Assembly: GCA_002269645.1 (NCBI GenBank) | Contig: NIVC01000393.1 | Coordinates: forward strand, 496,001-560,000 | DNA from: Macrostomum lignano | Lineage: Eukaryota | Direction of reading: 5' to 3' | Length of the DNA stretch: 64,000 nucleotides | Shown: piece after piece, positions 3,680-47,603 of the stretch | Layout: every line of letters begins with the position of its first letter | Numbering within the stretch: position 1 is the first letter of the stretch | Made by a program: the position numbers and the translations under genes | Notes under the pieces: model-generated | What the model was told of the DNA's origin: nothing | The model's input: the letters and a program-made list of their open reading frames with translations, nothing else | The model's database searches: none

Positions 3680-3710
<31 letters not shown>

Positions 3711-6700
3711 TGCAGGCTGCAGCAAATCAGCAGGAACTGCAGCGACATGTAATTCAGCTTTGGCAACAACAACAACAACAACAACAACAACAGCCTCAGC
3801 CCCAGCATTTAGGCCTGACGGAGCTGCCGACTGACCTGTCCTCCGCTGCTGCCACTGCGCTGCTACTAAGCCAGGGTGGCTGGGGCTGCCTGTACGACCC
3901 CGAGGCTCTATGGAAGCTGCGCAGCTTGCAGATGATGCAGGCGAATGCAGCCAGTCTGCAGGAATCGGCTGCGGCCGCACTTCAGGAGGCCTCCGGACTG
4001 GTGCGAAACGCCTGCCCGGCTGATTCGCTGACCACCGGTGGCACCGGGCAGTGTCGCTGGCCCTGCTGTGCCTACAGGAGTGTCTCCCAGGTAATTAGTT
4101 ACGCAGGCAGTTCACTGGGCAAAAGACGTTCGGATTAGGGATTGGATTTGAATTTGCTGACTCCTATTGCTAAAATCCTGAGCCTTTTTGCTGCCTTCTG
4201 CCAGTCGGACCTCGCCTCGCACATGTCCCGCGAGCACCCGCTTGACAGCGCAGCGGTGGGTCAACTGCGCGCCCAGTCAGCCTGCGTGCGCGCCCTCGAA
4301 GCTGCACTCGGGGACGAACGATCGCGGCTGGCTGCTATGACGAAGCATGTCCGAGAAGCCGCTGCCACCACCGCCGCCGCAGCTGCAAGCGTCGCCTGTC
4401 AGCAGCCGACAACAACAACAACGCGAGACCAAAGTTTGCATCACAACAACCATCAGCAGCAACAACAGCAAATCTATTTTAACTCTGCTCTGCTTGCGGC
4501 TGCTTCCTCTCCGATGGGTGGCCTGGTTCAGAATGGCGCCTCGGCGGCTGCGGCTGCGGCTGCAGCGGCGGCGGTTGCAGCTGCGGCTGCGTCTGTCTCC
4601 GTCACATCTTCCGCAGCGCCATCATCTGCCATCTCGGCGATGGCCTCCGGGGCAGCTACAGCGACTCCAACGACAGGGATGTCTTCGAATGCAGCAGCTG
4701 CTGCTGCGGCGTCGAGGCGGGGCCGACTGCCCGACAAAGCCGGTCTGCCGCTAGGAGGAGGTTGGAAAGCTGAAATTCTGTTAAACTGAAAAATGTCATT
4801 TCAAAATCGAAACATTTCAATCACCAGACTCTAATTTTCAAAACTTCAGACTTTCACAAGAATCGTGATTTCTACAACAAAAACGACATCCGACCGCCGT
4901 TTACATACGCATCATTGATTCGGCAGGTAAGCTGATGGTCTATCTTGCAAGCGATGGCGATAATCTTTTTTATAGTTTTTATTTACGAGCGCAATGCAAG
5001 AATTTCTGCACATTTTGACACTGCCGCAGGCAATAATCGAATCGCCCAATCGACAGCTCACGCTGAACGAGATCTACATTTGGTTTCAGCGCAGTTTCGC
5101 GTTCTTCCGACGAAACGAGGCCACGTGGAAGGTGAGAATTTTCTGTAGCACTGTACATTCGTGTTTTTGTACAGCAACCGAAACATTCGATTGCTTGCCC
5201 CGTACAAAGTCATAGTCTTTGTTCTTAGGCAAAGCTAATATTAGAAAAACACCATCTTCGAATGGATTCCCAACTCAAAGTAAATTATGGTTTGAATTTG
5301 AATAATCTATTGGATTTCAATTTCTTAAGGCCTATGACTCAGTTTTTGTGTTGTAAAATAAGTAAATTGTCCTGCCGAAACTGTCATATCAAGGGCTGCA
5401 GTTATAGCAGCACAATATAACCTTGGTTGATTGCATTGCATTGCTGCTTTCTGCCTCAAGTGGGTCAGCCGTCTGGACTGACGGGGTTCTTCCTTGTCCT
5501 TCCGTCCATGGCTGCCCCCTCCCCTCTCCTTCTGTCTCTCGTATTCCTTATGTTCCGCCTGCTAAGAAACAAGGGGCTTTCGGGTCGGTCATAACTGAAT
5601 TTTGCAACTTTTCCCTTTCTTCTTTATTTTTCTCTTTCTTTCTTCTTCAGACCCCCCCGCGCATGCGATTGCAGCAATGTGCGCGCCTGCGTGTGTTCCA
5701 CTTCCAACTAACAAGACTGAACTGGATGCACCGTTCTCCCCTCCGCTCTCTGCTCCCCTTCCTATTCCCGCATGCGCTTGTTTGGGCACGACAAACAAAC
5801 AGGGGCCTCGGGGCTCAGTTTAGCCAAGGGAAGGAAACACACGGCAGGGAGAAGGGATAGGAAAAGGGCTGCATCGGCAGCAAAGAGGGCTGCATCCCCT
5901 CCCCGTCCTCCTTGTGTTGGTTGTTTACTCTGCCAGCGCGCGGCCTGGTGGAGTGCGGAATGACGGCTTTGTTGATTCTCCAGACATTCAAACCCTTGCG
6001 CACAGGGGAACGCTGGGTTCCGGTTTTCTAAAGGAGGAACAAGGAGAGCTTTCGTGTGGGGGGAGTAAGCAAGGGGAAGGCGGGCAGTCAGTCGAGAGGC
6101 GAGTTCAGTGCTTCAAGCTAAAGCTTGATCGTGGAACTAAAGTGTTTCAGCAAGCCCAAGCCAAACGGGATAAACTCTCATTTAATCAATTCTATGCTGT
6201 ATCAATTCGTAGATCCAGTTTGACAGTTGACAGAAGAATTTGTTTGATTGAACATGCAACGAAACTGGCTCTGGCCTGTGATAGCCCCAGTTTGTGTTTG
6301 TTTTCTTTGTGCGTCAGCGAGTGGCGCTGGCGCTGGCGTTGCATGATTGGATCGATCTGGTCGGTAAATGTTGTGTATATTTATCTTAACCATTCCGTAT
6401 GCAAACCCAACCTGGAGGCGAGGTAAATAGAGAGTGAAGCCATGGTCGTTTGCTGTCAGTTCATGCTAAAATTCTGGGCAAGCAAACAATTTGCGAATGC
6501 TATTTTTAGGGGGAGAAGTTGACATTTTCCTGTGTCGTAAATTTTTACAGAGAACCATTAAGATAGAGAGAAAGAAACAAAGATTAGACTGACTACAAAG
6601 ACTAGGCGGAGGAAGGACAGGGGGGAGCCGCGCGGGATTGCCGGCAGTCGAGGGCGATACTTCCTCGAAATGGGGTTGGGGAGCCACAGGCAGGGGACCA

Positions 6701-8792
6701 GTAAAAGAGCCTTCCCAGAAAAGATGGACCCAGACTGTGAAGTCAAACGAATCCCACCACAAACGCTTCTCAACAGAATGCGGTCAGGCACAACCTATCT
6801 CTGCACAAATGCTTTATGCGAGTCGAAAACGTCAAAGGCGCCGTCTGGACGGTGGACGAAGCGGAGTTCTACAGGCGCCGGCTGCAGCGAGGAGCCAGCG
6901 GTGGCAGCGTCGGAGTCGGAAGCACTTTGTGAGTCAGCCGTGGTACAAGGCCAAGCCAATCAGCTTGATATTCATTCCAATACATGAGATTAACACTTTT
7001 AAGCTTCTGTAATAGAATGAGGTTATTGTGAACCCTAAGCCCGCCCTGAGTAGGCTACTGCTTTGAGCTGTTTGCGAGTATATATTATTTATGTACTTTG
7101 TACTTTAAGTTACAGTCGGTATTTCAGTGTGTCTATTACACTACTTTACCCTACTCCTCAGCTTGGCAACTAAGCTGAAGTAAAAGAAACACGAACAGCT
7201 AAAAAGTCTGAGCTAACGCAGCCGACACATAGACACAAACGCACTGGGCCAAGCTAAGTAGGTAAACTAAGTAAGGCACTGTGCTGTACACATTTGCAGC
7301 AGCAAAGTATGCGCTTGTACTGCGATATAAGGGCCAAGGGAGGCGTGTTGTTGACTGGGAAAACACAAACACGGGGGCGGCGGGAAGGGGATGAGAGGAG
7401 CAAAAAGGAGTGGGGATATAGAGAGCGAGCCACAAGATGGGGACAGAGGAGCAAGATGGGAGACGGCGGGGGAGTTGAAACCCAGGCCAGAAAACAAGGT
7501 AAAGAAATGTCGCTTTGGGGCGTGTAAAGTACAACTGGGCTGGGTCGCAAACAACACGGCCACCCCTTCTTACCCCCTTAGTCGAAAAACAACTCCCCAA
7601 CCTTCTATTCGATTCCTCCTTGACCGCAGGGCGTCCGTGAAGGCGGAGCTGGCAGGATTTGGATCGCCTGGGAGCGCCGATGCTACTGATGTAAGCAACT
7701 TGACCCTAAAAATAAACAGCAACATTCTACTTTTTCTACTGTTAGTAGCTCTGCGTACACAATTATTCTGGCTAATGAAGCCCAAACCTATTTATGCTTC
7801 TATATGCAATATAAACATATCGTTCGCAGGACGGCAGCGTTCTTGGCAAAGAGGAGCTGGCGATGCAGTACAAAGAAGAGCTTCGGTAAGTGCGGCGGAT
7901 TCTTGGCTGCTTTGCTTTGGTTTGAATTGGAAGACAATTGCATGGTATTGTTATTGCAGGTGTAAGTTTGGTGGTCAACCATTGAAATTAGGTCAATGGA
8001 ACTTTTTCAATGCAGCCGAAGTGGGGGTCAATGCAACCGAAGTGGGGGTCAATGCAACCGAAGTGGGGGTCAATGCAACCGAAGTGGGGGTCAATGAAAC
8101 CGAAGTGGGGGTCAATGCAACCGAAGTGGGGGTCAATGCAACCGAAGTGGGGGTCAATGCAACCGAAGTAGGGGTCAATGCAACCGAAGTGGGGGTCAAT
8201 GCAACCGAAGTGGGGGTCAATGCAACCGAAGTGGGGGTCAATGCAACCGAAGTGGGGGTCAATGCAACCGAAGTGGGGGTCAATGCAACCGAAGTGGGGG
8301 TCAATGAAACCGAAGTGGGGGTCAATGCAACCGAAATGCGGGTCAATGCGGCCTAAGTGGGAGTCAATACAACCGAAATGGGGGTCAATGCATCCAAAAC
8401 AAAGTTATATTACTAAAACGGATTGCGACAGGGGCCTCGCCCCCAGCCAGTAGTAGTAACACTAAAACGGGCGGCAACTCATGATCCTCATCTTCAGAGA
8501 CGACTCCGATCTGCTGCCAGCTAGCACAGCCGACTGGGGCATTCCAGCTGGAGCTGCGAAGCGCCTTCGACTCACCGATCTCGAGCCAGACGAGGCCGCG
8601 GAGCAATCGAACCACTCAATTGGCAGCAGTGGCCACGATTGCGGAGCTCTCCGACTGGTGTCGGCTGCCGCTGACGCCACCGATGATGCTGACGGCTTCG
8701 CAGACGGAGCCGTTGGCGAGGCCTCTATGGCCGATGAGGATGGCCACTACACTGGCGCTGAGAATGGAGTCGACGAGGAGACCGTCTTGTGA
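3279..8792 (+). CDS. FoxP: Forkhead box P transcription factor, ~611 aa, 9 coding exons
   Basis: Phase-consistent GT-AG exons: 3279-3392, 3668-4090, 4205-4760, 4850-4926, 5030-5131, 6777-6928, 7630-7690, 7830-7885, 8498-8792 (1836 nt). Encodes polyQ, a C2H2 finger ([24 protein letters not shown]), a leucine zipper ([26 protein letters not shown]) and a forkhead domain ([75 protein letters not shown]). The start codon is the least certain part. Confidence 0.96.
8018..8395. repeat. 21-bp minisatellite in the last FoxP intron
   Basis: Unit GAAGTGGGGGTCAATGCAACC, about 18 copies. Confidence 0.95.
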
Positions 8793-8968
8793 AATGACTC
8801 TGTGGGAAACGGCAGTTTCACTTGAGGCTTGAAATCAACCTCGTCATTCGAATATGGACTATGAACCCTCCCTGACTCTTGCGATTAACCTGTCAAACAG
8901 ATTGGTTCTCAGTTTTCATTTTCTCGATCTCTTTTGCCAGCCCCCCCCCCACATCTTTGGCTGCTATG

Positions 8969-9791
8969 CCAGCCTCCCAGATCCTCAGTTGCTGGGCCAG
9001 CCTCCCAGATCCTCAGTTGCTGAGCCAGCCACCCAGATCCTCAGTTGCTGGGCCAGCCTCCCAGATCCTCAGTTTCTGGGCCAGCCTCCCAGATCCTTAG
9101 TTGCTGGGCCACCTCAGATACTCAGTTTCTGGGCCAGCCTCCCAGATCCTCAGTTTCTAGGCCAGCCTCCCAGATCCTCAGTTGCTGGGCCAGCCTCCCA
9201 GATCCTCAGTTGCTGAGCCAGCCACCCAGATCCTCAGTTGCTGAGCCAGCCTCCCAGATCCTCAGTTTTTGGGCCAGCCTCCCAGATCCTTAGTTGCTGG
9301 GCCACCTCAGATACTCAGTTTCTGGGCCAGCCTCCCAGATCCCCAGTTGCTGGGCCAGCCTCCCAGATCCTCAGTTTCTGGGCCAGCCTCCCAGATCCTT
9401 AGTTGCTGGGCCACCTCAGATACTCAGTTTCTGGGCCAGCCTCCCAGATCCTCAGTTGCTGGGCCACCTTTTCAGATACTCAGTTTTTGGGCCAGCCTCC
9501 CAGATGCTCAGCTAATTTTCCAGCCTCCCAGATCCTCAGTAGCTGGGCCAGCCTCCCAGATCCTCAGTAGCTGGGCCAGCCTCCCAGATCCTCAGTTGCT
9601 GGGCCAGCCTCCCAGATCCTCAGTAGCTGGGCCAGCCTCCCAGATCCTCAGTAGCTGGGCCAGCCTTCCAGATCCTCAGTAGCTGGGCCAGCCTCCCAGA
9701 TCCTCAGTAGCTGGGCCAGCCTCCCAGATCCTCAGTTGCTGGGCCAGCCTCCCAGATCCTCAGATGCTGGGCCAGCCTCCCAGATCCTCAG
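8969..9791. repeat. ~28-bp minisatellite downstream of the FoxP stop
   Basis: Unit GGGCCAGCCTCCCAGATCCTCAGTTGCT with variants. Confidence 0.95.
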
Positions 9792-11049
9792 ATTTATCTT
9801 TCACACTCGCAGACATTCACCCGAGAGTTGCTTTAGCAAATCAGCCAATGAGAATACTGAAACGCATAAAAAATCTCTAGTGTCTGACCCCACAGCTTCT
9901 CTCCTCAACCGTCAACTGTCAGTTTTGATGTTAATCATTCCTAAATCCTGCTCGATATTATATTAATTATCCCTGGGCCTGCCATGATTTGACTTGTAAT
10001 TTTTTGCGCTGTTGCAGTCCCAGGCCAGATTGAAAATCCCTAGCAACAGAATTTCTTGACAGAATACTCGTAACTCACCTGCATTCTGCGCGGGCCTGTT
10101 TTGCGTTGCTTCTGCTGTTGCCAGCAGTTCTTTAATTTGAATCTTGCAATGCGGCAGTAATCTCTATCCCACCTGATGTATATTTGTCTCAAATGACCGG
10201 ATTGATTTGCTTGACTTGCTACTGCAATCAAGTAGCAAGATTGGAATGTCTTTTGCTTTTTTCATGCCTTTATTGCTGTCTCTCTAAGTCTTGCATCCAC
10301 GAAGACAAATTATGAATGCTACGTTCCTTACAGACTACTGACAGTACAGTTCGTGTTATAAAAATCTAATCTGTTCTTGAACTATTAATAAATTTCTACA
10401 TTTTGCGGTTCTTCCTGTCTAGTTTTGCTGTTGTTTAAATAGTTTTTCAGTATGACCACCCCTTCAATGCTTAAGGATTAATAATACGCGTTTTACTACA
10501 CAATGCAATCTATTAAATATCTGAAATCTGTCTAATTTAAGCTTACATAAACCTGTACAGCACTATACGGCCTCAGTGCCCATCCAATAGCAAAGCTCAA
10601 TCAATCAAAGTTTGTTGCCTTTACATGCATTTCGTATCAATTTTTCTATTATTAAAAGGCGTCTTCCTACAGTACATGTAAAAGTTCTTCGAGATACTAA
10701 AACAAGAGTGGTGTAAAGGTAGACGGTATTATTAAACCGAATAGAATGAGGCTAAAAAGTTGCAAAAGAAACCGGTTAGTTTACTTCGTGTAATTCGGGG
10801 CTAAACCATAATTTTAATTGGTTTACTCATACATCATAAATAAACCATAAACTACTTTTAAAGCTGGATCTTTTTGCAACTGAGAGATCGGGATTGTAAC
10901 GGAGCGTAAAAACATTACCGATAGCATAGTTAAATTCCTTTGATAAATAATTAATAAAAATTGATTACACCTGCCCTTAATTGGGCCAAGTGTGCAACCG
11001 ACAGCTCAGCTTGTTGTTCAGTCCATGGACTCAATTACACCCTCAATTA

Positions 11050-12765: not shown

Positions 12766-15700
12766 ATGTGGCTCACAACCCTGATCTTCTACCTGTTCAT
12801 TCTCATCGGCGGGGCGCACCTGCTTCGGAAGAACTTGCGCAATCGCCAGACAGCAAAGCTGAAGCACTGCGGCTTCTATTCAATCGGCGGAGAGTTCTTC
12901 AGCCTGAAGAAGTGGCTCATGTACTGCCTGCTCTGGTTGCGGGCTTGGCGTCAGAGGCAAAAGCCGATTCGAGTCTGGGACCGCGAGCTCCTGCAGCAAT
13001 GGGAAGAGTCCGAGAAACCGCAGCAGCTTGACCAGAACGACAAGGATGTAAGTTGACGATAGAGATCCGCCTATTCTGTCGCGAAGGGCAGGATGTCATG
13101 GTGACGACATGACGCGCTTTTTAATTTTGAGTGTGGGAGCCTGGCAAGCCTCTTAAGGGTGTCACCGCCAGTCAGCACGTTTCAGTACCTAAAAAACTGG
13201 GCCCAATTCCAGAGGTTCCATTACGAGACAATCTCTAGATTTTGTTCACCCTTTGTTCAATCTATCGTACAGGTATAAGCAAATGGTACTTGGTATATAA
13301 TCGTAATTCCTCTAATGCTATCAAGTAAGGTCTAAGTAAGGTCTGCCAACTACATTCGCGTATCATTTTTGGCATGTGGCATGTGTTTTAACACAAAGCA
13401 AAAACTGGTTCCAGTTGCAACTAGTCCAAAGACCCACCTTATTCTACTAATTAGTTCTTTTTAATCGGCGAAATCTCATCAAGCAGCTCGCGTAGTCTAA
13501 GCAAAGCAGTTCATAAACCCGATATCTTGGTATAGTTCTTGTCATTCGAGTAATTTCTTTGTTCCCCCAGTCCATCGATTCTGTCTATTTCTACGGAGGC
13601 GAGCTGGAATCGGACAAGCCGGCCATAGTTATCCGAATGGCCAGGCGGCCCGACCGAGTGGCCGAGCTCTGGTTTCTGGTGCGCATGCCGGACGGTACCA
13701 TCCTGGAGCACCCGGTGCAGCCCAATACTCACGTGACCAACTGCAGTCCGGACACCTTCTCCGCCGGCGGATTTACTATTACTTGCGACGAGCCGATGAA
13801 CTACTGGAGCCTGCGCTACCACGGCCTGATGAAGCGCGGCATCGCCGACCAGCTGGAGCCGCAGGCCACGTCGCACAACCTGGATGACTACGTGACTGTC
13901 AATCTGCGCGCAAAATTCCGCGCCTCCGTCAATCCGTTCGACGCTAAGACGGATCTCAGTCCAAAATCGTGGCCGAGTTTCTCGCCCGCGAGCCCTGGAG
14001 CTCTGCATTCTTTGCCAAGCTGAAGCGAAACGAGGAACAAGTCCACCTGGAGCAGTGGGGAATGCTGACTGGAGAGATGACAGTTGGAACTCAGCGCTAC
14101 GATCTCAATATGAGCGCTTATAGGGACCACTCCTACGGTATGGCTCAATTAAGAACTTGATTTAAAATTAATGAGTAACTTACGAGTGTATATACGACAG
14201 TTCGTGTATGCCAATTTTGTTGCAGGACTGCGCAATTGGCGTCAATACTATCGCTACGCGGCCCACTTTGGCTACCTGGAGAATGGGAGCTTCTTCAGCT
14301 TCGGCTCGGTGTCGATTCCACAGACGACAACGCACGTGAAGTACGGCTATATCTACCTGCCCTACGGCAAGAAGTGCGCCATCGATGGCCACGACTTGAA
14401 CCTGTGGGAGAAAGGTGAAATAACGGAGCCGCCGAAGAACTACCAGGTGCGACTGATTGCCAACGGCAAGGACTACAAAGTTGAGGTTTGGGCCGGTGAG
14501 AACATCCCGCTGTACGTGCAATCGGCCAGTTGCGTTCTATTCGAAAGGTTCACCGAATTCACCGTTAATGGCATTCGCGGATGGGGCATAACGGAGTACT
14601 GCTACTGGCATCACAGTCCTCTGGAAGGTACACCGGAGGGTTCCTTGCCAATGCCTATTGTTCCGGGTGCTCTGAGCAATGAAGACACCCTTGTCGTTGA
14701 CTTGGACCAACAAGACTGCTGTGTGAGGTCTCTGACTGGCGGCAAAGGGTCGCAGCTGGCTGTGGCTACAAAAATCTTTAATGAGAGCGGCAGAAGCGAC
14801 GTCCGAGTGCCGAAGGGGTTCGTAGTGACCACTAATGCGTACCGAGAGTTTATCCAAGCCAACACCGTGTTGTGGGAGGGCATTAACGAGCTGCGAGCGG
14901 CTGCCACCTCCGGAAAGGGCGGGTCTCTGGAACCTGCTTGTAAATCCTTGATCAAAGCTTTCGCCTCGGCGACTCTGCCAGCATCTGTGACCGAGGTAGT
15001 GATGAATTCATTGGATCGGATTTTTAGCGGCGAACCCGAAATTCGGTTCGCTGTGCGCTCGTCCGGCGTTAGCGAGGATGGCTCCAGCGCGTCCAGCGCA
15101 GGCCAGATGGAGACGTTCCTGGGCGTGAATCGGGATGAGCTGCCGGTAAAAATTGTTGAGTGCTGGGCGTCGCTTTTTTGCCATCGGGCCGTGCAGTACA
15201 GGCACAGCGTAGGCCAGGGCATCGATGCCAGCATGGCGGTGGTGGTGCAGGGGATGGTCCCAGCCACAGCGGCTGGAGTTCTCTTCAGCCAGGATCCGAT
15301 AAGCGGCTGCTCGAGCCTGATGAAGATTGAAGCGAACTTCGGCCTCGGCGAGAGTGTCGTGTCCGGCTTAGTGACGCCTGACTCGTTCACCGTTCGACGA
15401 TTTCCGGACGGCTACAAGACCATTGAGGATCGCCAGCTGGGCGAGAAGTCCGAAGTCATGCAGGTGGGCGAGTCAGGCGGCCTGGAGACCAGGCACAGTG
15501 ATGAGAAGGTCAGCTCCCTGAGCGACAAGCGAGTGCTGGCTCTGGCAGAGCTTGGCGAGGAGCTCGAGAAACGCTACGGAGCTGCCGTCGACGTTGAATT
15601 TGCACTGGTCGACGACACAATCCACCTGCTCCAGGTGCGCCCTGTTACTGCGATGGGACCAGAGACTTTGGATGATGTGATGCACGAGTTCGACAGCTCG

Positions 15701-17592
15701 TTCAGCTACAAGGAGGGCTGGCTGACAACGGCCAACATTGGCGAAATGAGTCCCGGTGCGATGACACCGCTGACTCTGAGCACGTTCGGCCGAGCGGTTG
15801 ACTGGAGCATGATAAAGTACAAGGCGACCAAGTCTGGCATTGTCCCAGAGATCAGCAGGCCGATGTCTGGCTTAGCCTGCAGCGCCAATCACCTGCTAAT
15901 CAACATGATGGAGCTGGGCCTGGGCTCCGAGGTCATGTCGCTGTTCGGCAAGTTCGACATGGCCTGCATCGCGCTGCTCGGTCGGACGCTGGACGAACCA
16001 ACTCGCGACGATCTACGACGCTACACGGACGGTGAGGCGAACCTGCTGGACAAGATTTGGAACGCCGTCTGTGACATTCTGACCATCTACCAGTCGACCA
16101 AGCTCACTGAGGCCTGGGAAAAGAAGTTCCAAGACGGCTACCACGTGATGCCGCAGTACACAGCTAAGGAGCAGTACATGGAGCTGGACTCTCGCATGCC
16201 GGACTATGCTCAGTGCTGGTGCGACACCATCATCAACACGGGCAAGTCCGCCGTCAACAGCATGGTGCTGGTGAGCATCTTCAACGAGCAATTCGGCTTG
16301 AATGAGCAGACGTTCAGCAAGCTGGCTCTGTGCCTGTCCAACTGCGAAAACGTCTACAGTGCCGATGTGCCGACCGCTCTGCACAACCTGGCCGTCGATC
16401 TGTCGAACTCTCCGAACTGCAGCGCCTTCCTGGCTTTGTCGCCGAAGGATGCCGCCAACTGGCTTCTGTCGTACGAAAGCGGCAAGGCCGGTGAGAGCTT
16501 TCGCAGCTTCATCAACCGGCATGGCTTCCGCTGCATCCGGGAGGCCGAGTTCCGTGAGGTGTCCTGGCGAGCCGCTCCGGAAAAAATCGTGGCCATAATG
16601 CAGGCCACCATTTCGGCTGGCCTGGTGCGGCGCGAGGCCAAGGAGACGCTGACTATTGATGAGATCGTGGAGCAGTTGGAGCTGCGCAACCCACTGACGA
16701 GGCGACTCGTCAAGGCGCTGATTCCGTTGGCCAGACGCGGTGTCGCAAGCCGCGAATGGGGTAAGGCCATCTCCATTCGAATGGTGGACGCCATCAAGGA
16801 GGGTTACAAGCACCTCGGCCAGCTAATGGTTAAAGAAGAGTTGGCGCCGGACACCGACTTGGTGTACTTCTTCACTCACCGGGAGCTCGGCCTGCTCGTT
16901 GATCGCAAGGACACCTCTTCATTGATCAAGAAGGTGAGCAAGCACGAGAAACACGCAGACTCATTAACAATTGTACCTATAGGTAGGTTTGAGTAAAAAT
17001 CTGAAGTCTGAGGATAAGTATAATAATCGATACGATTTTATTCAAGATTAAAAACTTTAAAAAGTTTTCATGCGTAAGCACAGCCCGCCATTCCGCCATC
17101 CCGTCCCTCGCACAGGCCCTGAAGCGACGCGCTGCTCTGCCGCGCCAGAACGCCCTGCAGCTTCCCGAGCTGATCAAAGGCAACCCCCGGTTCGACCTGC
17201 TCGCCGAGCAGGAGCGGCCGCGATCTCCTCCCGGTGCCAGACGCGGCAGCGGCGAGCAGCTGAGCGTCGCCGGCATGCCGGTGAGCCGCGGCTCGGTGAC
17301 CGGGCGCGCTCGGGTAATCCGCAACCTGCAGGACGCGGCCGAAATCGAGAAGGACGACGTGCTGATCGTACCGTACACCGACGTGGGCTGGACGCCCTAC
17401 TTCCCACTGATCAGCGGCCTCGCCACGGAGAAGGGAGGCCTGCTGTCGCACGGAGCCGTGGTGGCCCGCGAGTTCGGCATCCCCTGCATCGTCGGGGCCA
17501 AGCAGGCGACCTCGCTGTTCAAGACTGGCGACTTTGTCGATCTTGACGGCGAGCGCGGCCTGCTGAGGCTGGCGGAGCAGCAGCAGGAGTGA
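12766..17592 (+). CDS. Membrane-anchored PEP-utilising/ATP-grasp enzyme with rifampicin phosphotransferase/PigC domain order (often auto-annotated putative PEP synthase), ~1344 aa; apparent 1-nt deletion at 13963-13966
   Basis: Exons 12766-13047, 13571-14137, 14226-16933, 17116-17592. Hydrophobic N-terminus MWLTTLIFYLFILIGG. PPDK_N motifs GGKGSQLA, FAVRSSGVSED, SAGQMETFLGV, AGVLFSQDP, GLGESVVSG, DVEFA..LLQVRPVT. RPH-type middle region (TTANIGEMSPGAMTPL; FINRHGFRCIREAE). C-terminal His domain GGLLSHGAVVAREFGIP. No PEP-binding TIM barrel. Confidence 0.93.
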
Positions 17593-17723
17593 CACCCAAG
17601 AGAGCCTTGGCACCGCTGTTGCGAACATGCAGAATCACTGGCTAGGAAATTGCTGAATCACGTATAACAAAGACTCTTGCTGAAAAACATGGGACCTCCG
17701 GAGGGGGACTTCCGAGCATTCAA

Positions 17724-19120
17724 TGGGGCATTCTATCCTACAGAATGGGGCATCCTATCCTACAGAATGGGGTATCCTATCCTACAGAATGGGGTATCCT
17801 ATCCTACAGAATGGGGTATCCTATCCTACAGAATGGGGTATCCTATCCTACAGAATGGGGTATCCTATCCTACAGAATGGGGTATCCTATCCTACAGAAT
17901 GGGGTATCCTATCCTACAGAATGGGGTATCCTATCCTACAGAATGGGGTATCCTATCCTACAGAATGGGGTATCCTATCCTACAGAATGGGGTATCCTAT
18001 CCTACAGAATGGGGTATCCTATCCTACAGAATGGGGTATCCTATCCTACAGAATGGGGTATCCTATCCTACAGAATGGGGTATCCTATCCTACAGAATGG
18101 GGTATCCTATCCTACAGAATGGGGTATCCTATCCTACAGAATGGGTATCCTATCCTACAGAATGGGGAATTCTATCCTACAGAATGGGGAATTCTATCCT
18201 ACAGAATGGGGTATCCTATCCTACAGAATGGGGAATTCTATCCTACAGAATGGGGAATTCTATCCTACAGAATGGGGTATCCTATCCTACAGAATGGGGA
18301 ATTCTATCCTACAGAATGGGGAATTCTATCCTACAGAATGGGGAATTCTATCCTACAGAATGGGGAATTCTATCCTACAGAATGGGGAATTCTATCCTAC
18401 AGAATGGGGTATCCTATCCTACAGAATGGGGTATCCTATCCTACAGAATGGGGAATTCTATCCTACAGAATGGGGAATTCTATACTACAGAATGGGGAAT
18501 TCTATCCTACAGAATGGGGTATCCTATCCTACAGAATGGGGTATCCTATCCTACAGAATGGGGTATCCTATCCTACAGAATGGGTATCCTATCCTACAGA
18601 ATGGGGAATTCTATCCTACAGAATGGGGTATCCTATCCTACAGAATGGGTATCCTATCCTACAGAATGGGGTATCCTATCCTACAGAATGGGGAATTCTA
18701 TCCTACAGAATGGGGAATTCTATCCTACAGAATGGGGTATCCTATCCTACAGAATGGGGAATTCTATCCTACAGAATGGGGAATTCTATCCTACAGAATG
18801 GGGTATCCTATCCTACAGAATGGGGTATCCTATCCTACAGAATGGGGAATTCTATCCTACAGAATGGGGTATCCTATCCTACAGAATGGGGAATTCTATC
18901 CTACAGAATGGGGAATTCTATCCTACAGAATGGGGTATCCTATCCTACAGAATGGTGAATTCTATCCTACAGAATGGGGCATTCTATCCTACAGAATGGG
19001 GAATTCTATCCTACAGAATGGGGAATTCTATCCTACAGAATGGGGTATCCTATCCTACAGAATGGGGCATCCTATCCTACAGAATGGGGAATTCTATCCT
19101 ACAGAATGGGGCATTTTATC
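17724..19120. repeat. 22-bp minisatellite between two convergent genes
   Basis: Unit ATCCTACAGAATGGGGTATCCT with a GAATTCT variant; roughly 63 copies. Confidence 0.97.
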
Positions 19121-19547: not shown

Positions 19548-22500
19548 TCAGCCCCATTTCTGTCTCTCGCCGGAGCCGAAGATGGCGAAGAACAGCACGT
19601 TTGCAGCGTGCAGCAGTGCGGCCAGGAGGAACACCCGAGACCACGACTGGGCGCTCTGCAAGTTTGGAAGGCCACTTTCTGGCGTTCGATTACATCACAT
19701 TCTATTGTCGTAGTGAAGAATAAATTATAGACTCTTAGCGAAGTCTCTTATACAACATTTCGCTATATTCTTAGGATAGCCATCCGCGTATTTTAATATT
19801 TTATTTCTCATCACTCACTCTCCTCTCTCCACCCCTCTTTCTTCCCCCATCTCACTCGATGCCCTACCTCTACCCATACCCCGTACTCTCCTCCTAAACT
19901 GCATACTCTCCTCTCCCCCACACTCTCCCCCTCTCGCTCATACTCTCCCTCTCTCCCCCACACTCTCCCCCTCTCCCCCACACTCTCCCCCTCTCGCTCA
20001 TACTCTCCCCTCTCCCCCATACTCTCCCCTCTCCCCCATACTCTCCCCCTCTCCCCCATACTCTCCCTCTCTGCCCCATACTCTCCCCTCTCCCCCACAC
20101 TCTCCCCCTCTCGCTCATACTCTCCCCTCTCCCCCATACTCTCCCCTCTCCCCCATACTCTCCCCCTCTCCCCCATACTCTCCCCTCTCCCCCATACTCT
20201 CCCCCTCTCGCTCATACTCTCCCTCTCTCCCCCACACTCTCCCCCTCTCCCCCACACTCTCCCCCTCTCGCTCATACTCTCCCTCTCTCCCCCACACTCT
20301 CCCCCTCTCCCCCACACTCTCCCCCTCTCGCTCATACTCTCCCCTCTCCCCCATACTCTCCCCTTTCCCCCATACTCTCCCCTCTCCCCCATACTCTCCC
20401 CTCTCCCCCACACTCTCCCCCTCTCCCCCACACTCTCCCCCTCTCGCTCATACTCTCCCTCTCTCCCCCATACTCTCCCCTCTCCCCCATACTCTCCCCT
20501 CTCCCCCATACTCTCCCCCTCTCGCTCATACTCTCCCTCTCTCCCCCACACTCTCCCCTCTCCCCCACACTCTCCCCTCTCGCTCATACTCTCCCTCTCT
20601 CCCCACACTCTCCCCCTCTCCCCCACACTCTCCCTCTCCCCCATACTCTCCCTCTCTCCCCCATACTCTCCCCTCTCCCTCATGCTCTTCCCTCTCCCCC
20701 ATACTCTCCCCTCTCCCCATACTCTCCCCATATCCCCCATACTCTCCCCTCTCCCCCATACTCTCCCCTCTCCCCCATACTCTCCCCTCTCCCCCATACT
20801 CTCCACTCTCCCCCATACTCTCCCTCTCTCCCCCATACTCTCCCCTCTCCCCCATACTCTCCCTCTCCCCCATACTCTCCCTCTCTCCCCATACTCTCCC
20901 CTCTCCCCCATACTCTCCCCTCTCCCCCATACTCTCCTCCTTTCTCCATAGTCTTCCCCAATATTTGCCTACCCTCTCTCCAATCAGTCTTCCCATTGTC
21001 TCTCTTACCCAACTCACTTCCCACCCCCCTCTCACTCCGGCACTCACGTGATCCTCCGCCATGTAGGCGGTGGCCACCGGCAGGAAGATTCCAGCCATAG
21101 AGCCGACCCCATTGGCCAGGCCCATCAGGATGCCGGCGTATCGGGGCGCCAGGTCCAGCAGGTTCACGTTGAAGCCTGCGGGCGGGGCAGGTTTGAACAG
21201 GAATTTGGGAAGAGAGGGGGTTATGACCGGGATGGGAGAAGTGCCCCAGCTACCTGACAGAGCGATCGCGCTAAAGCCGACAGCCAGGGTCAGGCAGACG
21301 ACAGCCACTCTGGCATCGGATGAGTAACCAGCGACCAGAAGAAATATTGCCTCCATGCCGAAGCCTGCGATGGTTGGTTTGAAGGCGTGGTGATCAGGTG
21401 TGGGGTTGATCGGTGTGGGGTTGATCGGTGTGGGGTTGATCATGTGTGGGGTTGATCGGTGTGGGGTTGATCGGTGTGGGGTTGATCGGTGTGGGGTTGA
21501 TCGGTGTGGGATTGATCGGTGTGGGGTTGATCGGTGTGGGGTTGATCGGTGTGGGGTTGATCGGTGTGGGGTTGATCGGTGTGGGGTTGATCATGTGTGG
21601 GGTTGATCATGTGTGGGATTTATCGGGTGTGGGATTGATCATGTGGGGGATTGATCGGGTGTGGGATTGATCAGGTGTGGGATTGATCGGTGTGGGATTG
21701 ATCGGGTGTGGGGTTGATCGGTGTGGGATTGATCAGGTGTAGGATTGATCGGGTGTGGGATTGATTGGGTGTGGGAATGATCGAGTATGCGATTGATCGG
21801 GTGTGGGATTGATCGGGTGTGGGATTGATCGGGAGTGGGATTGATCGGGTGTAGGATTGATCGGGTGTGGGATTGATCGGGTGTGGGAATGATCGAGTAT
21901 GCGATTGATCGGGTGTGGGATTGATCGGGTGTGGGATTGATCGGGTGTGGGATTGATCGGGTATGGGATTGATCGGGTGTGGGATTGATCGGGTGTGGGA
22001 TTGATCGGTGTGGGATTGATCGGGTGTGGGGTTGATCGGTGTGGGATTGATCAGGTGTAGGATTGATCGGGTGTGGGATTGATTGGGTGTGGGAATGATC
22101 GAGTATGCGATTGATCGGGTGTGGGATTGATCGGGTGTGGGATTGATCGGGAGTGGGATTGATCGGGTGTAGGATTGATCGGGTGTGGGATTGATCGGGT
22201 GTGGGAATGATCGAGTATGCGATTGATCGGGTGTGGGATTGATCGGGTGTGGGATTGATCGGGTATGGGATTGATCGGGTGTGGGATTGATCAGGTGTGG
22301 GATTGATCGAGTGTGGGATTGATCAGGTGAGGGATTGTTCAGGTTTGGGATTGATCAGGTGTGGTATCATTACCAAAGCAGATGTACAGCTTTCTAACCG
22401 CCGTAGTTGTCAGGCGCCCATTGTTGAGGAAGTCGGCAGTGCAGCCTCCGATGGGGACGATGACGGAGGTCAGCAGGTGCGGCATCGCCGACACGAAGCC

Positions 22501-25362
22501 GCTCTGCAAGACGATTGACGCGTTGCCATGGAAACAGGGCCCAAATGAATTTAGCGAAATCAATCTCACCTGCGTCAAATCGAACTGAAAGACGTCGCAA
22601 AAAAACTTGGTGGGCTCCACAATGAGCAGGTAGAATGCTCAGCCGTGAGCAATCTCCATCACGATAACAGCCAGCACTGGCAGTGAGGTGAAGATCGACT
22701 TCCAGGGCGTGTCGCAGCTCTGGGGGGGGGGTAATTTATTGCCCTAGTTTCAGATTATGACATCAACCAGGTAAAAAATTCTTGATTAAAACCTGTGCAT
22801 CCACGTCCGTATGGTCACCGATCGAGTCAACAATGTAATTTCGCTCAGCCTCCGAGATGCAGGGGTGCTCGGCCGGCTTCTCGGATACGTACAGAAACCA
22901 CAAGGCAAACCAGAGTATGCCAATGCCTCCTGGGATGGGGTGGGTCTGGTGTAACAGCATAGATACCCTGTCTAACAGCATAGACACCCTGTCTAACAGC
23001 ATAGATACCCTGTCTAACAGCATGGACACCCTGTCTAACAGCATAGACACCCTGTCTAACAGCATAGACACCCTCTCTAACAGCATAGACACCCTGTCTA
23101 ACAGCATGGACACCCTGTCTAACAGCATAGACACCCTGTCTAACAGCATAGACACCCTGTCTAACAGCATGGACACCCTGTCTAACAGCATAGACACCCT
23201 GTCTAACAGCATAGACACCCTGTCTAACAGCATGGACACCCTGTCTAACAGCATAGATACCCTGTCTAACAGCATAGACACTCTGTCTAACAGCATGGAC
23301 ACCCTGTCTAACAGCATGGACACCCTGTCTAACAGCATGGACACCCTGTCTAACAGCATGGATGCCTCACCATAGATATAGAACGGAGCAGGCCAGCCAA
23401 TGGAGTCGGTCAGCGCCCCGGACAGCAATAGGCTGAAAAGCACCCCAACGTTGGACCCGCAGAAGGCGATGTTGGCGAGCTGCGAGAGCTCATGCGGTGG
23501 CGCCCAATAGCGCCAAATTCCGAGACAGGCGGGATAGGTGCAGCCCTGCGGGGGAGGGGTGGTCAGACATCAGTCATACAATGGTCGCAACTTACTTAGA
23601 AAAAGATCATTTAAAATAGTCATGCAATGCTCGCAGTTGGTCCCATACTTTACTGCTAAAATGACCATTATAAACACCTGGTCCCAATCCTCACCTCGGC
23701 CAGACCCTGCAGAAACCGGATCAAAATGGTGAATCCGTAGCTCGCACTCATGGCCAGTGGGAGCAGCAGGTTGAGCGCAGAAGAGATCACCGTGGCCAGA
23801 CCGAAGGCTCGAGTTGCCGACAGCTTGTTGGCGATGATGCCACCTGGAAGCTGGGTGATCAGGTAGCCCCAGAAGTATGAGCTCTCCACCGCGCCCACCA
23901 CGGATGCCGGCCACGGCTCCGCGAGGTGCTGAAGGCGGTTGAGCAGAATGGGCTTTTCAGTGACTGCTGTCAGGGTTTCTGAGACCTTCCGTGGTGTACG
24001 GTGGTGCATGAAGACAAACACCCTTTGGAAACACCGGTGCATGAAGACAAACACCCTTTGGAAACACCGGTGCATGAAGACAAACACCCTTTGGAAACAC
24101 CGGTGCATGAAGACAAACACCCTCTGGAAACACCGGTGCATGGAGACACCCTCTAGAAACACCGGTGTATGAAGACACCCTCTAGAAACACCGGTGCATG
24201 AAGACACCCTCTAGAAACACCGGTGCATGAAGACACCCTCTAGAAACACCGGTGCATGAAGACACCCTCTAGAAACACCGGTGCATGAAGACACCCTCTA
24301 GAAACACCGGTGCATGAAGACACCCTCTGGAAACAACGGTGCATGAAGACACCCTCTGGAAACAACGGTGCATGAAGACACCCTCTAGAAACACCGGTGC
24401 ATGAAGACAAACACCCTTTGGAAACACCGGTGCATGAAGACAAACACCCTCTGGAAACACCGGTGCATGGAGACACCCTCTAGAAACACCGGTGCATGAA
24501 GACACCCTCTAGAAACACCGGTGTATGAAGACACCCTCTAGAAACACCGGTGCATGAAGACAGACACCCTCTAGAAACACCGGTGCATGAAGACACCCTC
24601 TAGAAACACCGGTGCATGAAGACAGACACCCTCTAGAAACACCGGTGCATGAAGACAAACACCCTTTGGAAACACCGGTGCATGAAGACAAACACCCTCT
24701 GGAAACACCGGTGCATGGAGACGCCCTCTAGAAACACCGGTGCATGAAGACACCCTCTAGAAACACCGGTGCATGAAGACAGACACCCTCTAGAAACACC
24801 GGTGCATGAAGACAAACACCCTTTGGAAACACCGGTGCATGAAGACAAACACCCTCTGGAAACACCGGTGCATGGAGACACCCTCTAGAAACACCGGTGC
24901 ATGAAGACACCCTCTAGAAACACCGGTGTATGAAGACGCCCTCTAGAAACACCGGTGCATGAAGACGCCATCCAGAAACACCGGTGCATGAAGACGCCAT
25001 CCAGAAACACCGGTGTATGAAGACGCCATCCAGAAAAACCGGTGCATGAAGACGCCATCCAGAAACACCGGTGCATGAAGACGCCATCCAGAAGACAGCA
25101 AAGCCATCGAACGCACCTCGGTAGTGTTGTCGGCCTCTCCGCGGGCACCTGAGGCATTGAACCTGCTCCTGAAGTAGCCGCAAGCCACTCCAATGCTGCA
25201 TCGAAAGCTGAACGTGATGGCCAGACCCAGCGAGCACAGCATCGCTAAAAGCATTCTCTGCTTAACACACGCTTTTCCGCACAAGTTCACTCCGCTTTTC
25301 TCAAGCAGCAACCCTTTCGGATTGTCGGCGACTTCATTTGTCGAACCGTCTGTTTCCTGCAT
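19548..25362 (-). CDS. SLC17 vesicular glutamate transporter-like MFS transporter (divergent); in-frame TGA in exon 5, possibly a pseudogene or null allele
   Basis: Exons (transcript order) 25362-25117, 23928-23695, 23545-23371, 22929-22793, 22719-22570, 22503-22374, 21364-21254, 21175-21048, 19655-19548, all phase-consistent. Motifs [81 protein letters not shown]. TGA at 22641-22639. Confidence 0.9.
19905..20940. repeat. CT-rich degenerate minisatellite, SLC17 intron 8
   Basis: Units like CTCTCCCCCATACTCTCCC. Confidence 0.95.
21395..22362. repeat. 15-16-bp minisatellite, SLC17 intron 6
   Basis: Unit GTGTGGGATTGATCGG / GTGTGGGGTTGATCG. Confidence 0.95.
22951..23363. repeat. 21-bp minisatellite filling SLC17 intron 3
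   Basis: Unit CCCTGTCTAACAGCATAGACA. Confidence 0.96.
24003..25092. repeat. 29-33-bp minisatellite, SLC17 intron 1
   Basis: Unit GAAACACCGGTGCATGAAGAC(AAAC)ACCCTCTA. Confidence 0.96.
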
Positions 25363-25635: not shown

Positions 25636-26130
25636 TCTAAAATCCACATATCTAACACCCACATATCTAACACCCACATATCTAACACCCGCATATCTAA
25701 CACCCACATATTTAACACCCGCATATCTAACACCCACATATCCAACACCCACGCGTCTAACACCCACATATCTAACACCCACATATTTAACACCCACATA
25801 TTTAACACCCACATATCTAACACCCACATATTTAACACCCGCATATCTAACACCCACATATCCAACACCCACGCGTCTAACACCCACATATCTAACACCC
25901 ACATATTTAACACCCACATATCTAACACCCACATATTTAACACCCGCATATCTAACACCCACATATCTAACACCCACATATCTAACACCCACATATCTAA
26001 CACCCACATATCTAACACCCACATTTCTAACACCCACATATCTAACACCCACATTTCTAACACCCACATATCTAACACCCACATTTCTAACACCCACATA
26101 TCTCACACCCACATATCTAACACCCACATA
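25636..26130. repeat. 15-bp minisatellite upstream of the SLC17 gene
   Basis: Unit TCTAACACCCACATA. Confidence 0.96.
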
Positions 26131-26137
26131 TAGCAGC

Positions 26138-31431: not shown

Positions 31432-47603
<16,172 letters not shown>

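What the first reader, a model, noticed from the sequence alone, without database searches (positions are those of the whole stretch)
12766..17592. Animal membrane-anchored RPH/PigC-architecture enzyme: an ATP-driven small-molecule activating system of unknown substrate
Seen: ATP-grasp (PPDK_N) domain, then a long helical middle domain, then a C-terminal phospho-His swivel domain (SHGAVVARE), with no PEP-binding TIM barrel. An N-terminal hydrophobic anchor and a ~330-aa extra domain precede these. Established: PEP synthase/PPDK place the His domain centrally and end in a TIM barrel. The order seen here is that of bacterial rifampicin phosphotransferase and the prodigiosin condensing enzyme PigC/RedH, which phosphorylate a hydrophobic small molecule via phospho-His. 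Inference: this is not a gluconeogenic enzyme but a membrane-tethered xenobiotic-inactivating or pigment/secondary-metabolite-forming enzyme in an animal. Similar invertebrate proteins are, as I recall, auto-annotated but uncharacterised.
Basis: partly seen in the sequence, partly recalled or inferred. Interest (0 to 1): 0.85.

Follow-up and report, generated by a model that had tools for sequence, protein, structure and literature searches.

The report
Animal fused phosphate-lyase and RPH-like dikinase gene
This flatworm gene encodes a membrane-anchored enzyme joining a rifampicin-phosphotransferase-type ATP-driven kinase to a domain resembling a bacterial phosphosteroid lyase, a pairing also found as adjacent genes in gut bacteria, so it probably removes a hydroxyl group from a fatty molecule at the cost of ATP; nobody has tested it.

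Summary
Window 12766-17592 (+) is a four-exon gene of the flatworm Macrostomum lignano. It encodes an N-terminal anchor, a ~330-aa domain, a PPDK_N ATP-grasp, an Rph-type helical domain and a C-terminal phospho-His swivel domain. There is no TIM barrel anywhere in the window.

The kinase half resembles Listeria rifampin phosphotransferase over its whole length and keeps its catalytic residues. It falls far below the curated cut-offs for RPH, PigC and PpsA.

The new result concerns the "extra" domain. It is a DUF7065/DUF7064 (AttH-like) domain. Its closest solved relative, and its only PDB sequence hit, is 25-phosphosteroid lyase, with a shared R-D-x-S-x-G-x-R motif. In 9 of 11 bacterial loci examined, a stand-alone gene for this domain lies directly upstream of an RPH-like dikinase gene. 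The animal protein is therefore a fusion of that pair.

Best explanation (inferred, about 0.5): the kinase phosphorylates a hydrophobic alcohol and the lyase-like domain eliminates the phosphate. The substrate is unknown.

The fusion occurs across Bilateria, including a shark and a turtle. RefSeq labels it "rifampicin phosphotransferase-like", and I found no characterisation.

This window's copy carries a 1-bp deletion in exon 2.

The parts
12766..17592 (+). Whole CDS: 4 exons, 1344 codons once the 1-bp deletion is repaired
   Evidence: Matches M. lignano BOX15_Mlig003482g1.
12769..12825 (+). N-terminal hydrophobic anchor (aa 2-20, WLTTLIFYLFILIGGAHLL), followed by the basic cluster RKNLRNRQTAKLK. 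Read as a P450-like signal anchor with the catalytic domains in the cytosol (inference from the positive-inside rule).
   Evidence: Orthologues in oyster, abalone, shark, urchin and lobster also start with a hydrophobic segment.
12871..12915 (+). Juxtamembrane motif GFYSIGGEFFSLKKW, corresponding to the family consensus G-x-Y-x-x-P-G-x-W-Y-x-L-K
   Evidence: Visible in the N-termini of many long and short family members.
13571..14656 (+). N-terminal catalytic-looking domain (aa ~95-427): DUF7065 + DUF7064, AttH-like all-beta fold, 25-phosphosteroid-lyase-like. Interrupted by intron 2.
   Evidence: Pfam. AF2 model pLDDT 91.6. Foldseek top hit 25-PSL, E 1.5e-13. Profile against PDB sequences finds only 25-PSL, E 9.7e-10. 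hhalign 93.8%.
13962..13963 (+). Site of the 1-bp deletion relative to the syntenic copy (missing G). It causes a frameshift in exon 2 of this window's copy.
14041..14061 (+). Conserved motif V-H-L-E-Q-W-G (family H-Y-E-Q-x-G; H, E, Q and G invariant or nearly so)
14122..14239 (+). Conserved motif R-D-H-S-Y-G-L-R-N-W (aa 279-288, split by intron 2). It aligns with R-D-R-S-W-G-V-R of 25-PSL. The Asp is Asn in the product-complex entry 9g4c.
14732..15688 (+). ATP-grasp (PPDK_N) domain. Contains GGKG (K22 equivalent, 14735-14755), AVRSS (R117 equivalent, 15047-15067), DVEF (E297 equivalent, 15587-15607) and LLQVRP (15626-15649).
   Evidence: Residue roles are from PMC4844700.
15689..17343 (+). 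Helical middle domain of Rph type (precomputed Pfam Rph_4th, PF27448), interrupted by intron 3. Contains S-R-E-W-G-K (16748-16768), equivalent to RPH-Lm Arg666-Glu667...Lys670, the second phosphotransfer site.
17344..17559 (+). Phospho-His swivel domain (PEP-utilizers), with the catalytic His in LLSHGAVVARE (17440-17472; His1297, equivalent to RPH-Lm His825)

Best explanation
The gene encodes a bifunctional, membrane-anchored enzyme that fuses two activities which bacteria encode as a two-gene cassette.

Step 1 rests on strong homology. The RPH-type dikinase half binds ATP in its ATP-grasp domain. It transfers the beta-phosphate to the swivel His (His1297) and releases AMP and Pi. The swivel domain then carries the phosphate to the helical acceptor domain, where the Arg-Glu...Lys motif helps transfer it to a hydroxyl of a hydrophobic small molecule.

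Step 2 is inferred. The N-terminal domain, which resembles 25-phosphosteroid lyase, eliminates that phosphate. The net reaction is an ATP-driven dehydration of an alcohol to an alkene, or another reaction that uses phosphate as the leaving group.

The N-terminal signal anchor would hold the enzyme on a membrane with both catalytic halves in the cytosol, next to ATP and a membrane-dissolved substrate. The substrate is unknown. By analogy with 25-PSL, a hindered (tertiary or secondary) alcohol on a sterol or isoprenoid chain is the leading guess.
For: Kinase half:
- Pfam finds PPDK_N plus PEP-utilizers and no TIM barrel.
- The best PDB sequence and fold matches are Listeria RPH over the whole length: phmmer E 7e-77 and Foldseek E 1.3e-45 over ~960 columns.
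- The equivalents of K22, R117, E297, Q309/R311, R666-E667-K670 and H825 are all conserved, and invariant or nearly so across 23-25 homologues (roles from PMC4844700).

N-terminal domain:
- High-confidence AF2 model (pLDDT 91.6).
- The four top Foldseek hits are 25-PSL entries (E 1.5e-13 to 4e-12), ahead of AttH, kievitone hydratase and the Fsa2-type pericyclases.
- The family profile finds only 25-PSL among 177,635 PDB sequences (E 9.7e-10). The match is three collinear stretches on the family's most conserved motifs. They include R-D-x-S-x-G-x-R, whose Asp is Asn in the product complex 9g4c.
- hhalign against 25-PSL N-terminal fragments gives 93.8% probability.

Coupling:
- 9 of 11 bacterial loci carrying a stand-alone N-domain homologue have an RPH-like dikinase gene immediately downstream, often with overlapping stop and start codons. 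The order is the same as in the fusion.
- The best bacterial hit found from the kinase side (P0003) has the same upstream neighbour.
- In an ATP-grasp NJ tree, the animal kinases and the lyase-linked bacterial kinases group apart from RPH-Lm, with 63% bootstrap.

Precedent:
- Sterolibacterium uses a kinase plus 25-PSL tandem for ATP-dependent dehydration. The tertiary phosphoester has such a high transfer potential that an ATP-to-ADP kinase is fully reversible (PMC8449060). A dikinase that spends two anhydride bonds would make the step irreversible (inference).
Against: - No biochemical data exist for any member.
- Identity to 25-PSL is only ~14%.
- A 25-PSL homologue gives no Pfam DUF7064/7065 hit, so the relationship is at superfamily level.
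- The same fold also houses hydratases and pericyclases.
- The Sterolibacterium kinase 25-HSK belongs to a different kinase class and is not adjacent to its lyase.
- 2 of 11 bacterial N-domain genes lack a neighbouring kinase.
- Many animals, including birds, Aplysia and thrips, have anchor-plus-N-domain proteins without a kinase. The domain can therefore work without a fused kinase.
- That the Asp-to-Asn change in 9g4c marks the catalytic residue is my inference from the deposited sequences, not a published statement I could read.
Confidence: 0.5

Rival explanations
1. Terminal phosphorylation, essentially the first reader's view. The enzyme inactivates or tags a hydrophobic xenobiotic or endogenous small molecule by phosphorylation, as RPH does. 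The N-terminal beta-domain only binds or delivers the lipid substrate.
For: Whole-length similarity to RPH and conserved phosphotransfer residues. AttH-like and lipocalin-like folds often bind hydrophobic ligands.
Against: The N-domain family keeps a set of invariant polar residues typical of an active site: R, H-x-E-Q, R-D-H-S, R, E. These are shared in part with a lyase. The protein is far below the RPH equivalog cut-off. The first half of the acceptor domain, where RPH binds rifampin, does not align by sequence.
Confidence: 0.15
2. PigC-like activation for bond formation. Phosphorylation creates a leaving group, and the N-domain then catalyses a condensation or cyclisation (carbocation or pericyclic chemistry) rather than a simple elimination.
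For: PigC/RedH are in the same dikinase superfamily. The N-domain fold is shared with the Diels-Alderases Fsa2, Phm7 and CghA at E ~1e-9.
Against: 25-PSL ranks above the pericyclases by fold and is the only sequence-level PDB hit. The PigC/RedH NCBIfam scores are far below their cut-offs. No second-substrate pathway genes are conserved next to the bacterial pair.
Confidence: 0.15
3. Reverse order. The N-domain acts as a hydratase (like kievitone hydratase or CrtC) that makes an alcohol from an alkene. The kinase then traps this alcohol as a phosphate ester.
For: Kievitone hydratase and AttH are strong fold matches, E 2e-10 to 5e-10.
Against: The hydratases are not found by the sequence profile, whereas the phosphate lyase is. 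The shared motif with 25-PSL is Arg-rich.
Confidence: 0.1
4. It is a genuine PEP synthase or pyruvate phosphate dikinase, as some automatic names say.
For: The ATP-grasp and His domains hit PpsA/PPDK models.
Against: The His domain is C-terminal. There is no PEP-binding TIM barrel in the gene or the window. PpsA and PPDK match only by the ATP-grasp and His domains, at E 3e-17 and 3.5e-08 or weaker against 1.3e-45 for RPH. NCBIfam PpsA scores 309 bits against a 598 cut-off. PpsA is the outgroup in the tree.
Confidence: 0.01
5. This particular copy is a pseudogene, or carries an assembly error. This is independent of what the family does.
For: A single-base deletion after 13962 breaks the frame in exon 2.
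Against: dN/dS of 0.076 against the intact syntenic copy and no other lesion. The deletion is therefore very recent or a sequencing/assembly indel.
Confidence: 0.5

Closest known systems
Rifampin phosphotransferase (RPH-Lm, PDB 5FBS/5HV1) and the wider RPH-like small-molecule dikinase superfamily (Stogios et al. 2016, PMC4844700)
   Same: Same three-module order: ATP-grasp, helical acceptor domain, C-terminal swivel His. All catalytic residues are conserved, including the Arg-Glu...Lys 'block 9'. It is the best sequence and fold match in the PDB.
   Different: About 22% identity in the structural alignment. NCBIfam RPH score is 357 bits against a 999 cut-off. The first half of the acceptor domain is not alignable by sequence. 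It carries an N-terminal anchor plus a lyase-like domain, and it groups with lyase-linked bacterial kinases rather than with RPH-Lm. This is like Stogios's distant clades, which keep the catalytic motif but not rifampin specificity.
25-phosphosteroid lyase (25-PSL, PDB 9FZN/9G2I/9G4C), part of the 25-HSK/25-PSL ATP-dependent dehydration step of anaerobic cholesterol degradation in Sterolibacterium denitrificans (PMC8449060, PMC7411048)
   Same: Same two-lobed AttH-like fold. It is the only PDB sequence hit of the N-domain family profile. The D-x-Y-F, Q-x-G...R-D-x-S-x-G-x-R and G-x-G-x-x-E-F motifs are shared. Both work, or are proposed to work, downstream of a kinase.
   Different: About 14% identity. 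H-x-E of the family's H-x-E-Q motif is not shared. The partner kinase in Sterolibacterium is an ATP-to-ADP phosphotransferase-family enzyme encoded elsewhere, not an RPH-type dikinase. A 25-PSL homologue is not captured by Pfam DUF7064/7065.
PigC/RedH/HapC prodiginine-condensing enzymes
   Same: Same dikinase architecture. They give a precedent for phosphorylation used as leaving-group activation rather than as an end point (PMC13534948 listed).
   Different: NCBIfam PigC scores 306 against 1300 and RedH 284 against 1350. They have no N-terminal lyase-like domain.
Bacterial DUF7065/DUF7064 gene plus RPH-like dikinase gene cassettes (e.g. Breznakiella homolactica RmG30, Treponemataceae, Spirochaetota and Clostridiales MAGs)
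   Same: Both halves are homologous to the animal protein (N-domain 24-29%, kinase 29-34% identity). The order is the same, and the genes are often translationally coupled.
   Different: Two separate polypeptides with no membrane anchor. They are also uncharacterised.

Membership tests
RPH-like small-molecule dikinase superfamily | N-terminal ATP-grasp (PPDK_N) with the Lys22, Arg117 and Glu297 equivalents | tested here: met
   PPDK_N E 6e-70. GGK, AVRSS and DVEF are aligned to RPH-Lm and invariant or nearly so in homologues.
RPH-like small-molecule dikinase superfamily | Swivel phospho-His domain at the C-terminus, with no PEP/pyruvate TIM barrel | tested here: met
   PEP-utilizers at aa 1263-1334. 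The stop codon follows 10 codons later. No PEP-utilizers_C in the gene or the window.
RPH-like small-molecule dikinase superfamily | Helical acceptor domain with the Arg-Glu...Lys 'block 9' motif | tested here: met
   SREWGK aligns to RPH-Lm R666-E667-K670. R and E are nearly invariant. Precomputed Pfam Rph_4th. Whole-length Foldseek match to RPH.
RPH-like small-molecule dikinase superfamily | Dikinase chemistry: ATP to AMP + Pi + phospho-acceptor via phospho-His | not testable with these tools
   Needs an enzyme assay.
Rifampin phosphotransferase proper (clade A; NCBIfam NF041857) | More than 42% identity to RPH-Lm, or reaching the equivalog cut-off, with conserved rifampin-contact motifs | tested here: not met
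   357 bits against a 999 cut-off. About 22% identity. The apex/arm region (aa ~770-1010) is not aligned by phmmer.
PigC/RedH prodiginine ligases | Reaches the NCBIfam equivalog cut-off | tested here: not met
   PigC 306 against 1300; RedH 284 against 1350.
PEP synthase / PPDK | Central His domain followed by a C-terminal PEP-binding TIM barrel | tested here: not met
Pfam DUF7065 + DUF7064 (Rv3169-like) | Matches to both Pfam models in order | tested here: inconclusive
   The window protein scores below the gathering cut-offs (17-19 bits against 24.7-27). However, 39 of 48 (DUF7064, best E 1e-12) and 25 of 48 (DUF7065) of its aligned homologues match.
25-phosphosteroid lyase-like (AttH-like fold) phosphate lyases | Fold similarity to 25-PSL | tested here: met
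   Foldseek ranks 1-4, E 1.5e-13 to 4e-12, TM 0.55-0.57.
25-phosphosteroid lyase-like (AttH-like fold) phosphate lyases | Sequence-level homology and the shared R-D-x-S-x-G-x-R motif | tested here: met
   hmmsearch E 9.7e-10, the only PDB hit. hhalign 93.8%. The motif is nearly invariant in the family.
25-phosphosteroid lyase-like (AttH-like fold) phosphate lyases | C-O lyase activity on a phosphoester | not testable with these tools
   Needs an assay. The paper on the 25-PSL structure was not in the searchable library.

The most novel reading that the evidence does not exclude
Animals from flatworms to sharks and turtles carry an ER-anchored, oxygen-independent, ATP-driven dehydratase for sterol or isoprenoid alcohols. 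An example reaction would be a 25-hydroxysterol converted to a delta-24 sterol. It would be built by fusing a bacterial lyase-kinase operon, and would be an animal counterpart of the anaerobic bacterial cholesterol side-chain chemistry, using a dikinase to make the step irreversible.
Probability: 0.15. Interest if true: 0.9.

Novelty: new variant of a known kind. Interest (0 to 1): 0.7.

Why it matters
If the kinase-lyase reading is right, it assigns a concrete and testable reaction type to a protein family conserved across Bilateria. That family currently carries misleading automatic names: PEP synthase, rifampicin phosphotransferase, PigC-like, YvkC-like. It would be the first eukaryotic use of RPH-type dikinase chemistry, and the first case of that chemistry coupled to a phosphate lyase. 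It would extend the "phosphorylate, then eliminate" logic known from anaerobic bacterial sterol degradation to animals, with possible relevance to oxysterol, vitamin D, ecdysteroid or terpenoid metabolism. The bacterial two-gene cassette, including one in the cultured Breznakiella homolactica, offers an easy experimental entry point.

Tried and rejected
- PEP synthase identity: rejected.
- Bacterial contamination: rejected. The gene has three GT-AG introns, lies next to a FOXP gene, and is syntenic with an M. lignano contig.
- A second copy in the window: none.
- The search for related loci with family alignments A1 and A4 failed because no stretch was conserved enough. A single-protein scan gave 3 loci.
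- An 84-aa 25-PSL fragment returned only fragments of 146 aa or fewer from the large protein database. A full-length homologue was pieced together from a frameshifted metagenome gene. It gave no Pfam hit, so common Pfam membership of 25-PSL and the N-domain is not shown.
- Genes around the bacterial pairs show no conserved third partner or substrate clue.
- Literature searches for YvkC-like, putative PEP synthase in insects, DUF7064/7065 and phosphosteroid lyase found no characterisation of the animal family or of the domain.


Full report
**1. What is in the sequence**

Six-frame translation and the splice signals give a four-exon gene on the + strand:
- exon 1, 12766-13047;
- exon 2, 13571-14137;
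- exon 3, 14226-16933;
- exon 4, 17116-17592.

All introns are GT-AG. The ATG is at 12766 and the TGA ends at 17592, exactly the finding's coordinates.

The product is ~99.6% identical (four amino-acid differences outside the frameshift) to the 1344-aa Macrostomum lignano protein BOX15_Mlig003482g1. The window is syntenic with contig NIVC01000161.1 of that flatworm: 100% identical upstream and 97.6% across the gene. A FOXP gene lies upstream. This is a genuine animal gene, not contamination.

It lacks a G after position 13962 (TCC-AAAA here, TCCGAAAA in the other contig), which shifts the frame within exon 2. Otherwise the two copies differ at 15 synonymous and 4 non-synonymous codons, giving dN/dS 0.076. 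The lesion is therefore either very recent or an assembly indel.

**2. The kinase half**

- Pfam finds PPDK_N at aa 453-771 (E 6e-70) and the PEP-utilizers swivel domain at aa 1263-1334 (E 1e-22). It finds no PEP-utilizers_C.
- The TIM-barrel half of E. coli PpsA matches nothing in the 64-kb window.
- By sequence, the best solved structures are the Listeria rifampin phosphotransferase entries, at E 7e-77 in two stretches.
- An AlphaFold model of aa ~427-1344 (pLDDT 83.7) matches RPH over about 960 columns (E 1.3e-45). PpsA, HpeI and PPDK match only through shared domains.
- Every residue that Stogios et al. (PMC4844700) tie to catalysis is conserved: Lys22 (GGKG), Arg117 (AVRSS), Glu297, Gln309/Arg311, the Arg666-Glu667...Lys670 motif of the second phosphotransfer site (SREWGK) and His825 (SHGAVVARE). 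All are invariant or nearly so in alignments of 23-25 homologues.
- The protein is nevertheless far below every curated NCBIfam cut-off: RPH 357 against 999, PigC 306 against 1300, PpsA 309 against 598. The rifampin-contacting part of the acceptor domain does not align by sequence.

It therefore works like an RPH-type dikinase, but it is not a rifampin phosphotransferase, a PigC or a PEP synthase.

**3. The N-terminal domain is the new information**

A search of 1.84 billion representative proteins with aa 77-427 found only 420 relatives. They fall into three classes:
- about 1300-aa proteins with the full architecture;
- about 410-aa proteins with the anchor and this domain only;
- about 340-aa bacterial stand-alone proteins.

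Pfam assigns the family to DUF7065 + DUF7064: 25 and 39 of 48 members match, although the window protein itself is sub-threshold. The family has a constellation of invariant polar residues that looks like an active site: D-S-x-Y-F, A-R-R, E-x-W-S, H-Y-E-Q-x-G, R-D-H-S-(F/Y)-G-x-R-x-W and G-x-G-x-x-E.

An AlphaFold model is confident (pLDDT 91.6, pTM 0.90).
- Its four best PDB matches are 25-phosphosteroid lyase entries (9FZN, 9G2I, 9G4C; E 1.5e-13 to 4e-12).
- These rank ahead of AttH, kievitone hydratase and the Fsa2/Phm7/CghA pericyclases.
- By sequence, the family profile finds 25-PSL and nothing else in the PDB (E 9.7e-10). The three collinear matches fall on the family's conserved motifs.
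- The 25-PSL motif R-D-R-S-W-G-V-R aligns with R-D-H-S-x-G-x-R. The product-complex entry 9G4C carries Asn in place of that Asp, which I read as a catalytic-residue mutant (inference).
- hhalign against an alignment of 25-PSL N-terminal fragments gives 93.8% probability.
- The relationship is distant. Identity is about 14%, and a 25-PSL homologue has no significant Pfam hit.

**4. Genetic coupling**

In bacteria, the stand-alone N-domain gene is followed at once by an RPH-like dikinase gene (PPDK_N + Rph_4th + PEP-utilizers). The stop and start codons usually overlap or lie within about 40 bp.
- This holds in loci L001, L002, L006, L007 and L008, which are a Spirochaetota MAG and metagenome contigs.
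- It also holds in Breznakiella homolactica RmG30, a Treponemataceae MAG and a Clostridiales MAG.
- Two loci lack the kinase.
- Independently, the best bacterial hit obtained from the kinase side (P0003) has a DUF7065 + DUF7064 gene overlapping its start.
- In total, 9 of 11 loci are linked, in the same order as the domains of the animal protein.
- In a neighbour-joining tree of the ATP-grasp domain, the animal kinases, P0003 and the lyase-linked bacterial kinases form a group (63% bootstrap). It is separate from RPH-Lm and other bacterial homologues (70%), with PpsA as outgroup.

The animal gene is therefore a Rosetta-stone fusion of a conserved bacterial two-gene unit.

**5. Distribution and naming**

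Named cluster members show the full fusion in:
- a flatworm;
- molluscs (oyster, abalone, Elysia);
- crustaceans (spiny lobster, a shrimp);
- insects (sawflies, a sand fly, a cricket, a wasp);
- chelicerates (Limulus, a scorpion);
- a priapulid;
- echinoderms (a sea urchin, a starfish);
- a sawshark;
- as a partial model, a turtle.

Anchor-plus-N-domain proteins without a kinase occur in birds (chicken LOC776594), a hemichordate, Aplysia, a thrips and a stick insect.

RefSeq names vary: "rifampicin phosphotransferase(-like)", "PigC-like", "YvkC-like", "putative phosphoenolpyruvate synthase" or "uncharacterized". The RPH-like nature is thus already recorded by automatic annotation. Literature searches found no functional study of the animal proteins or of DUF7064/7065.

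**6. Mechanism**

Shown by homology: there is an ATP-grasp site, a swivel His and an acceptor site with the RPH catalytic motif. Hence ATP goes to AMP + Pi + His-P, and the phosphate then goes to a hydroxyl of a bound small molecule.

Inferred: the phosphoester is the substrate of the fused lyase-like domain, which eliminates phosphate. The result is an ATP-dependent dehydration, or a related reaction in which phosphate is the leaving group.

The precedent is the 25-HSK/25-PSL tandem of Sterolibacterium. There, the tertiary phosphoester has a group-transfer potential at least as high as ATP, and the ATP-to-ADP kinase is fully reversible (PMC8449060). A dikinase would pull such a step forward; this is my inference. 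PigC shows that this kinase family is already used for leaving-group activation.

The N-terminus has about 19 hydrophobic residues starting at residue 2, followed by RKNLRNRQTAKLK. By the positive-inside rule this looks like a P450-type signal anchor. It would place both catalytic halves in the cytosol at a membrane surface, which fits a lipid-soluble substrate and the need for ATP (inference).

The substrate is unknown. A sterol or isoprenoid alcohol is the best guess by analogy only.

**7. Verdict**

The xenobiotic or pigment guess is unsupported, and the key domain went unrecognised.

I rate this as a new variant of a known kind. It combines a known kinase class with a known lyase class in a fusion and operon that the searchable literature does not describe, in animals. 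Confidence in the kinase-then-lyase mechanism is about 0.5. Confidence that the two halves act on the same substrate in one pathway is about 0.8.

Noticed in passing
window 13962-13963: Single-base deletion (missing G) relative to the syntenic M. lignano contig. It frameshifts exon 2 of an otherwise well-conserved copy (dN/dS 0.076). It could be an assembly indel or a recent null allele.
   Followed up: partly
window 17722-19111, 19902-20937, 21391-22364, 22952-23359, 24018-25093, 25636-26131, 26747-28335, 30082-30565, 33284-34260, 34671-36782, 37308-38247, 40763-42176, 48104-48857, 56601-58861 and others: The window is packed with more than 20 unrelated minisatellite and microsatellite arrays (units of 4-50 bp, up to 265 copies). 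They produce long spurious ORFs and extreme GC/AT skews, for example around 40-42 kb.
   Followed up: partly
window ~3280-8800 (FOXP-CC in ORF 4142-4789): A FOXP-type forkhead gene lies upstream of the finding. The stretch 2829-10460 is 100% identical to contig NIVC01000161.1, whereas the dikinase gene region is only 97.6% identical.
   Followed up: partly
P0021/P0192 (chicken LOC776594), P0016 (Aplysia), P0014 (hemichordate), P0036 (thrips), P0123 (stick insect): Many animals, including birds, have ~410-aa proteins with the same anchor, juxtamembrane motif and lyase-like domain but no kinase. Whether they pair with a separate kinase is unknown.
   Followed up: no
L016 (P0038), metagenome contig of 4304 bp: An intronless 1343-aa ORF with the complete fused architecture sits on a JGI metagenome contig of unknown origin. 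The fusion may therefore also exist in a microbe, or this may be a transcript-derived contig.
   Followed up: no
P0163/P0168/P0171 (oyster, 1013 aa) within the cluster of P0012: Oyster isoform X2 is ~314 aa shorter than the 1327-aa form. This suggests alternative products that may lack the N-terminal anchor and lyase-like domain.
   Followed up: no
L017 6001-7109: A metagenomic 25-PSL homologue is split into 136-aa and 232-aa gene calls by an apparent frameshift. It keeps the RDRSWGVR motif but has no Pfam assignment.
   Followed up: partly
L010 and L011 (Breznakiella homolactica and a Treponemataceae MAG): A 5'-nucleotidase/metallophosphoesterase gene lies near the lyase-kinase pair in both loci. 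These are close relatives, so this may be shared ancestry rather than functional linkage.
   Followed up: no
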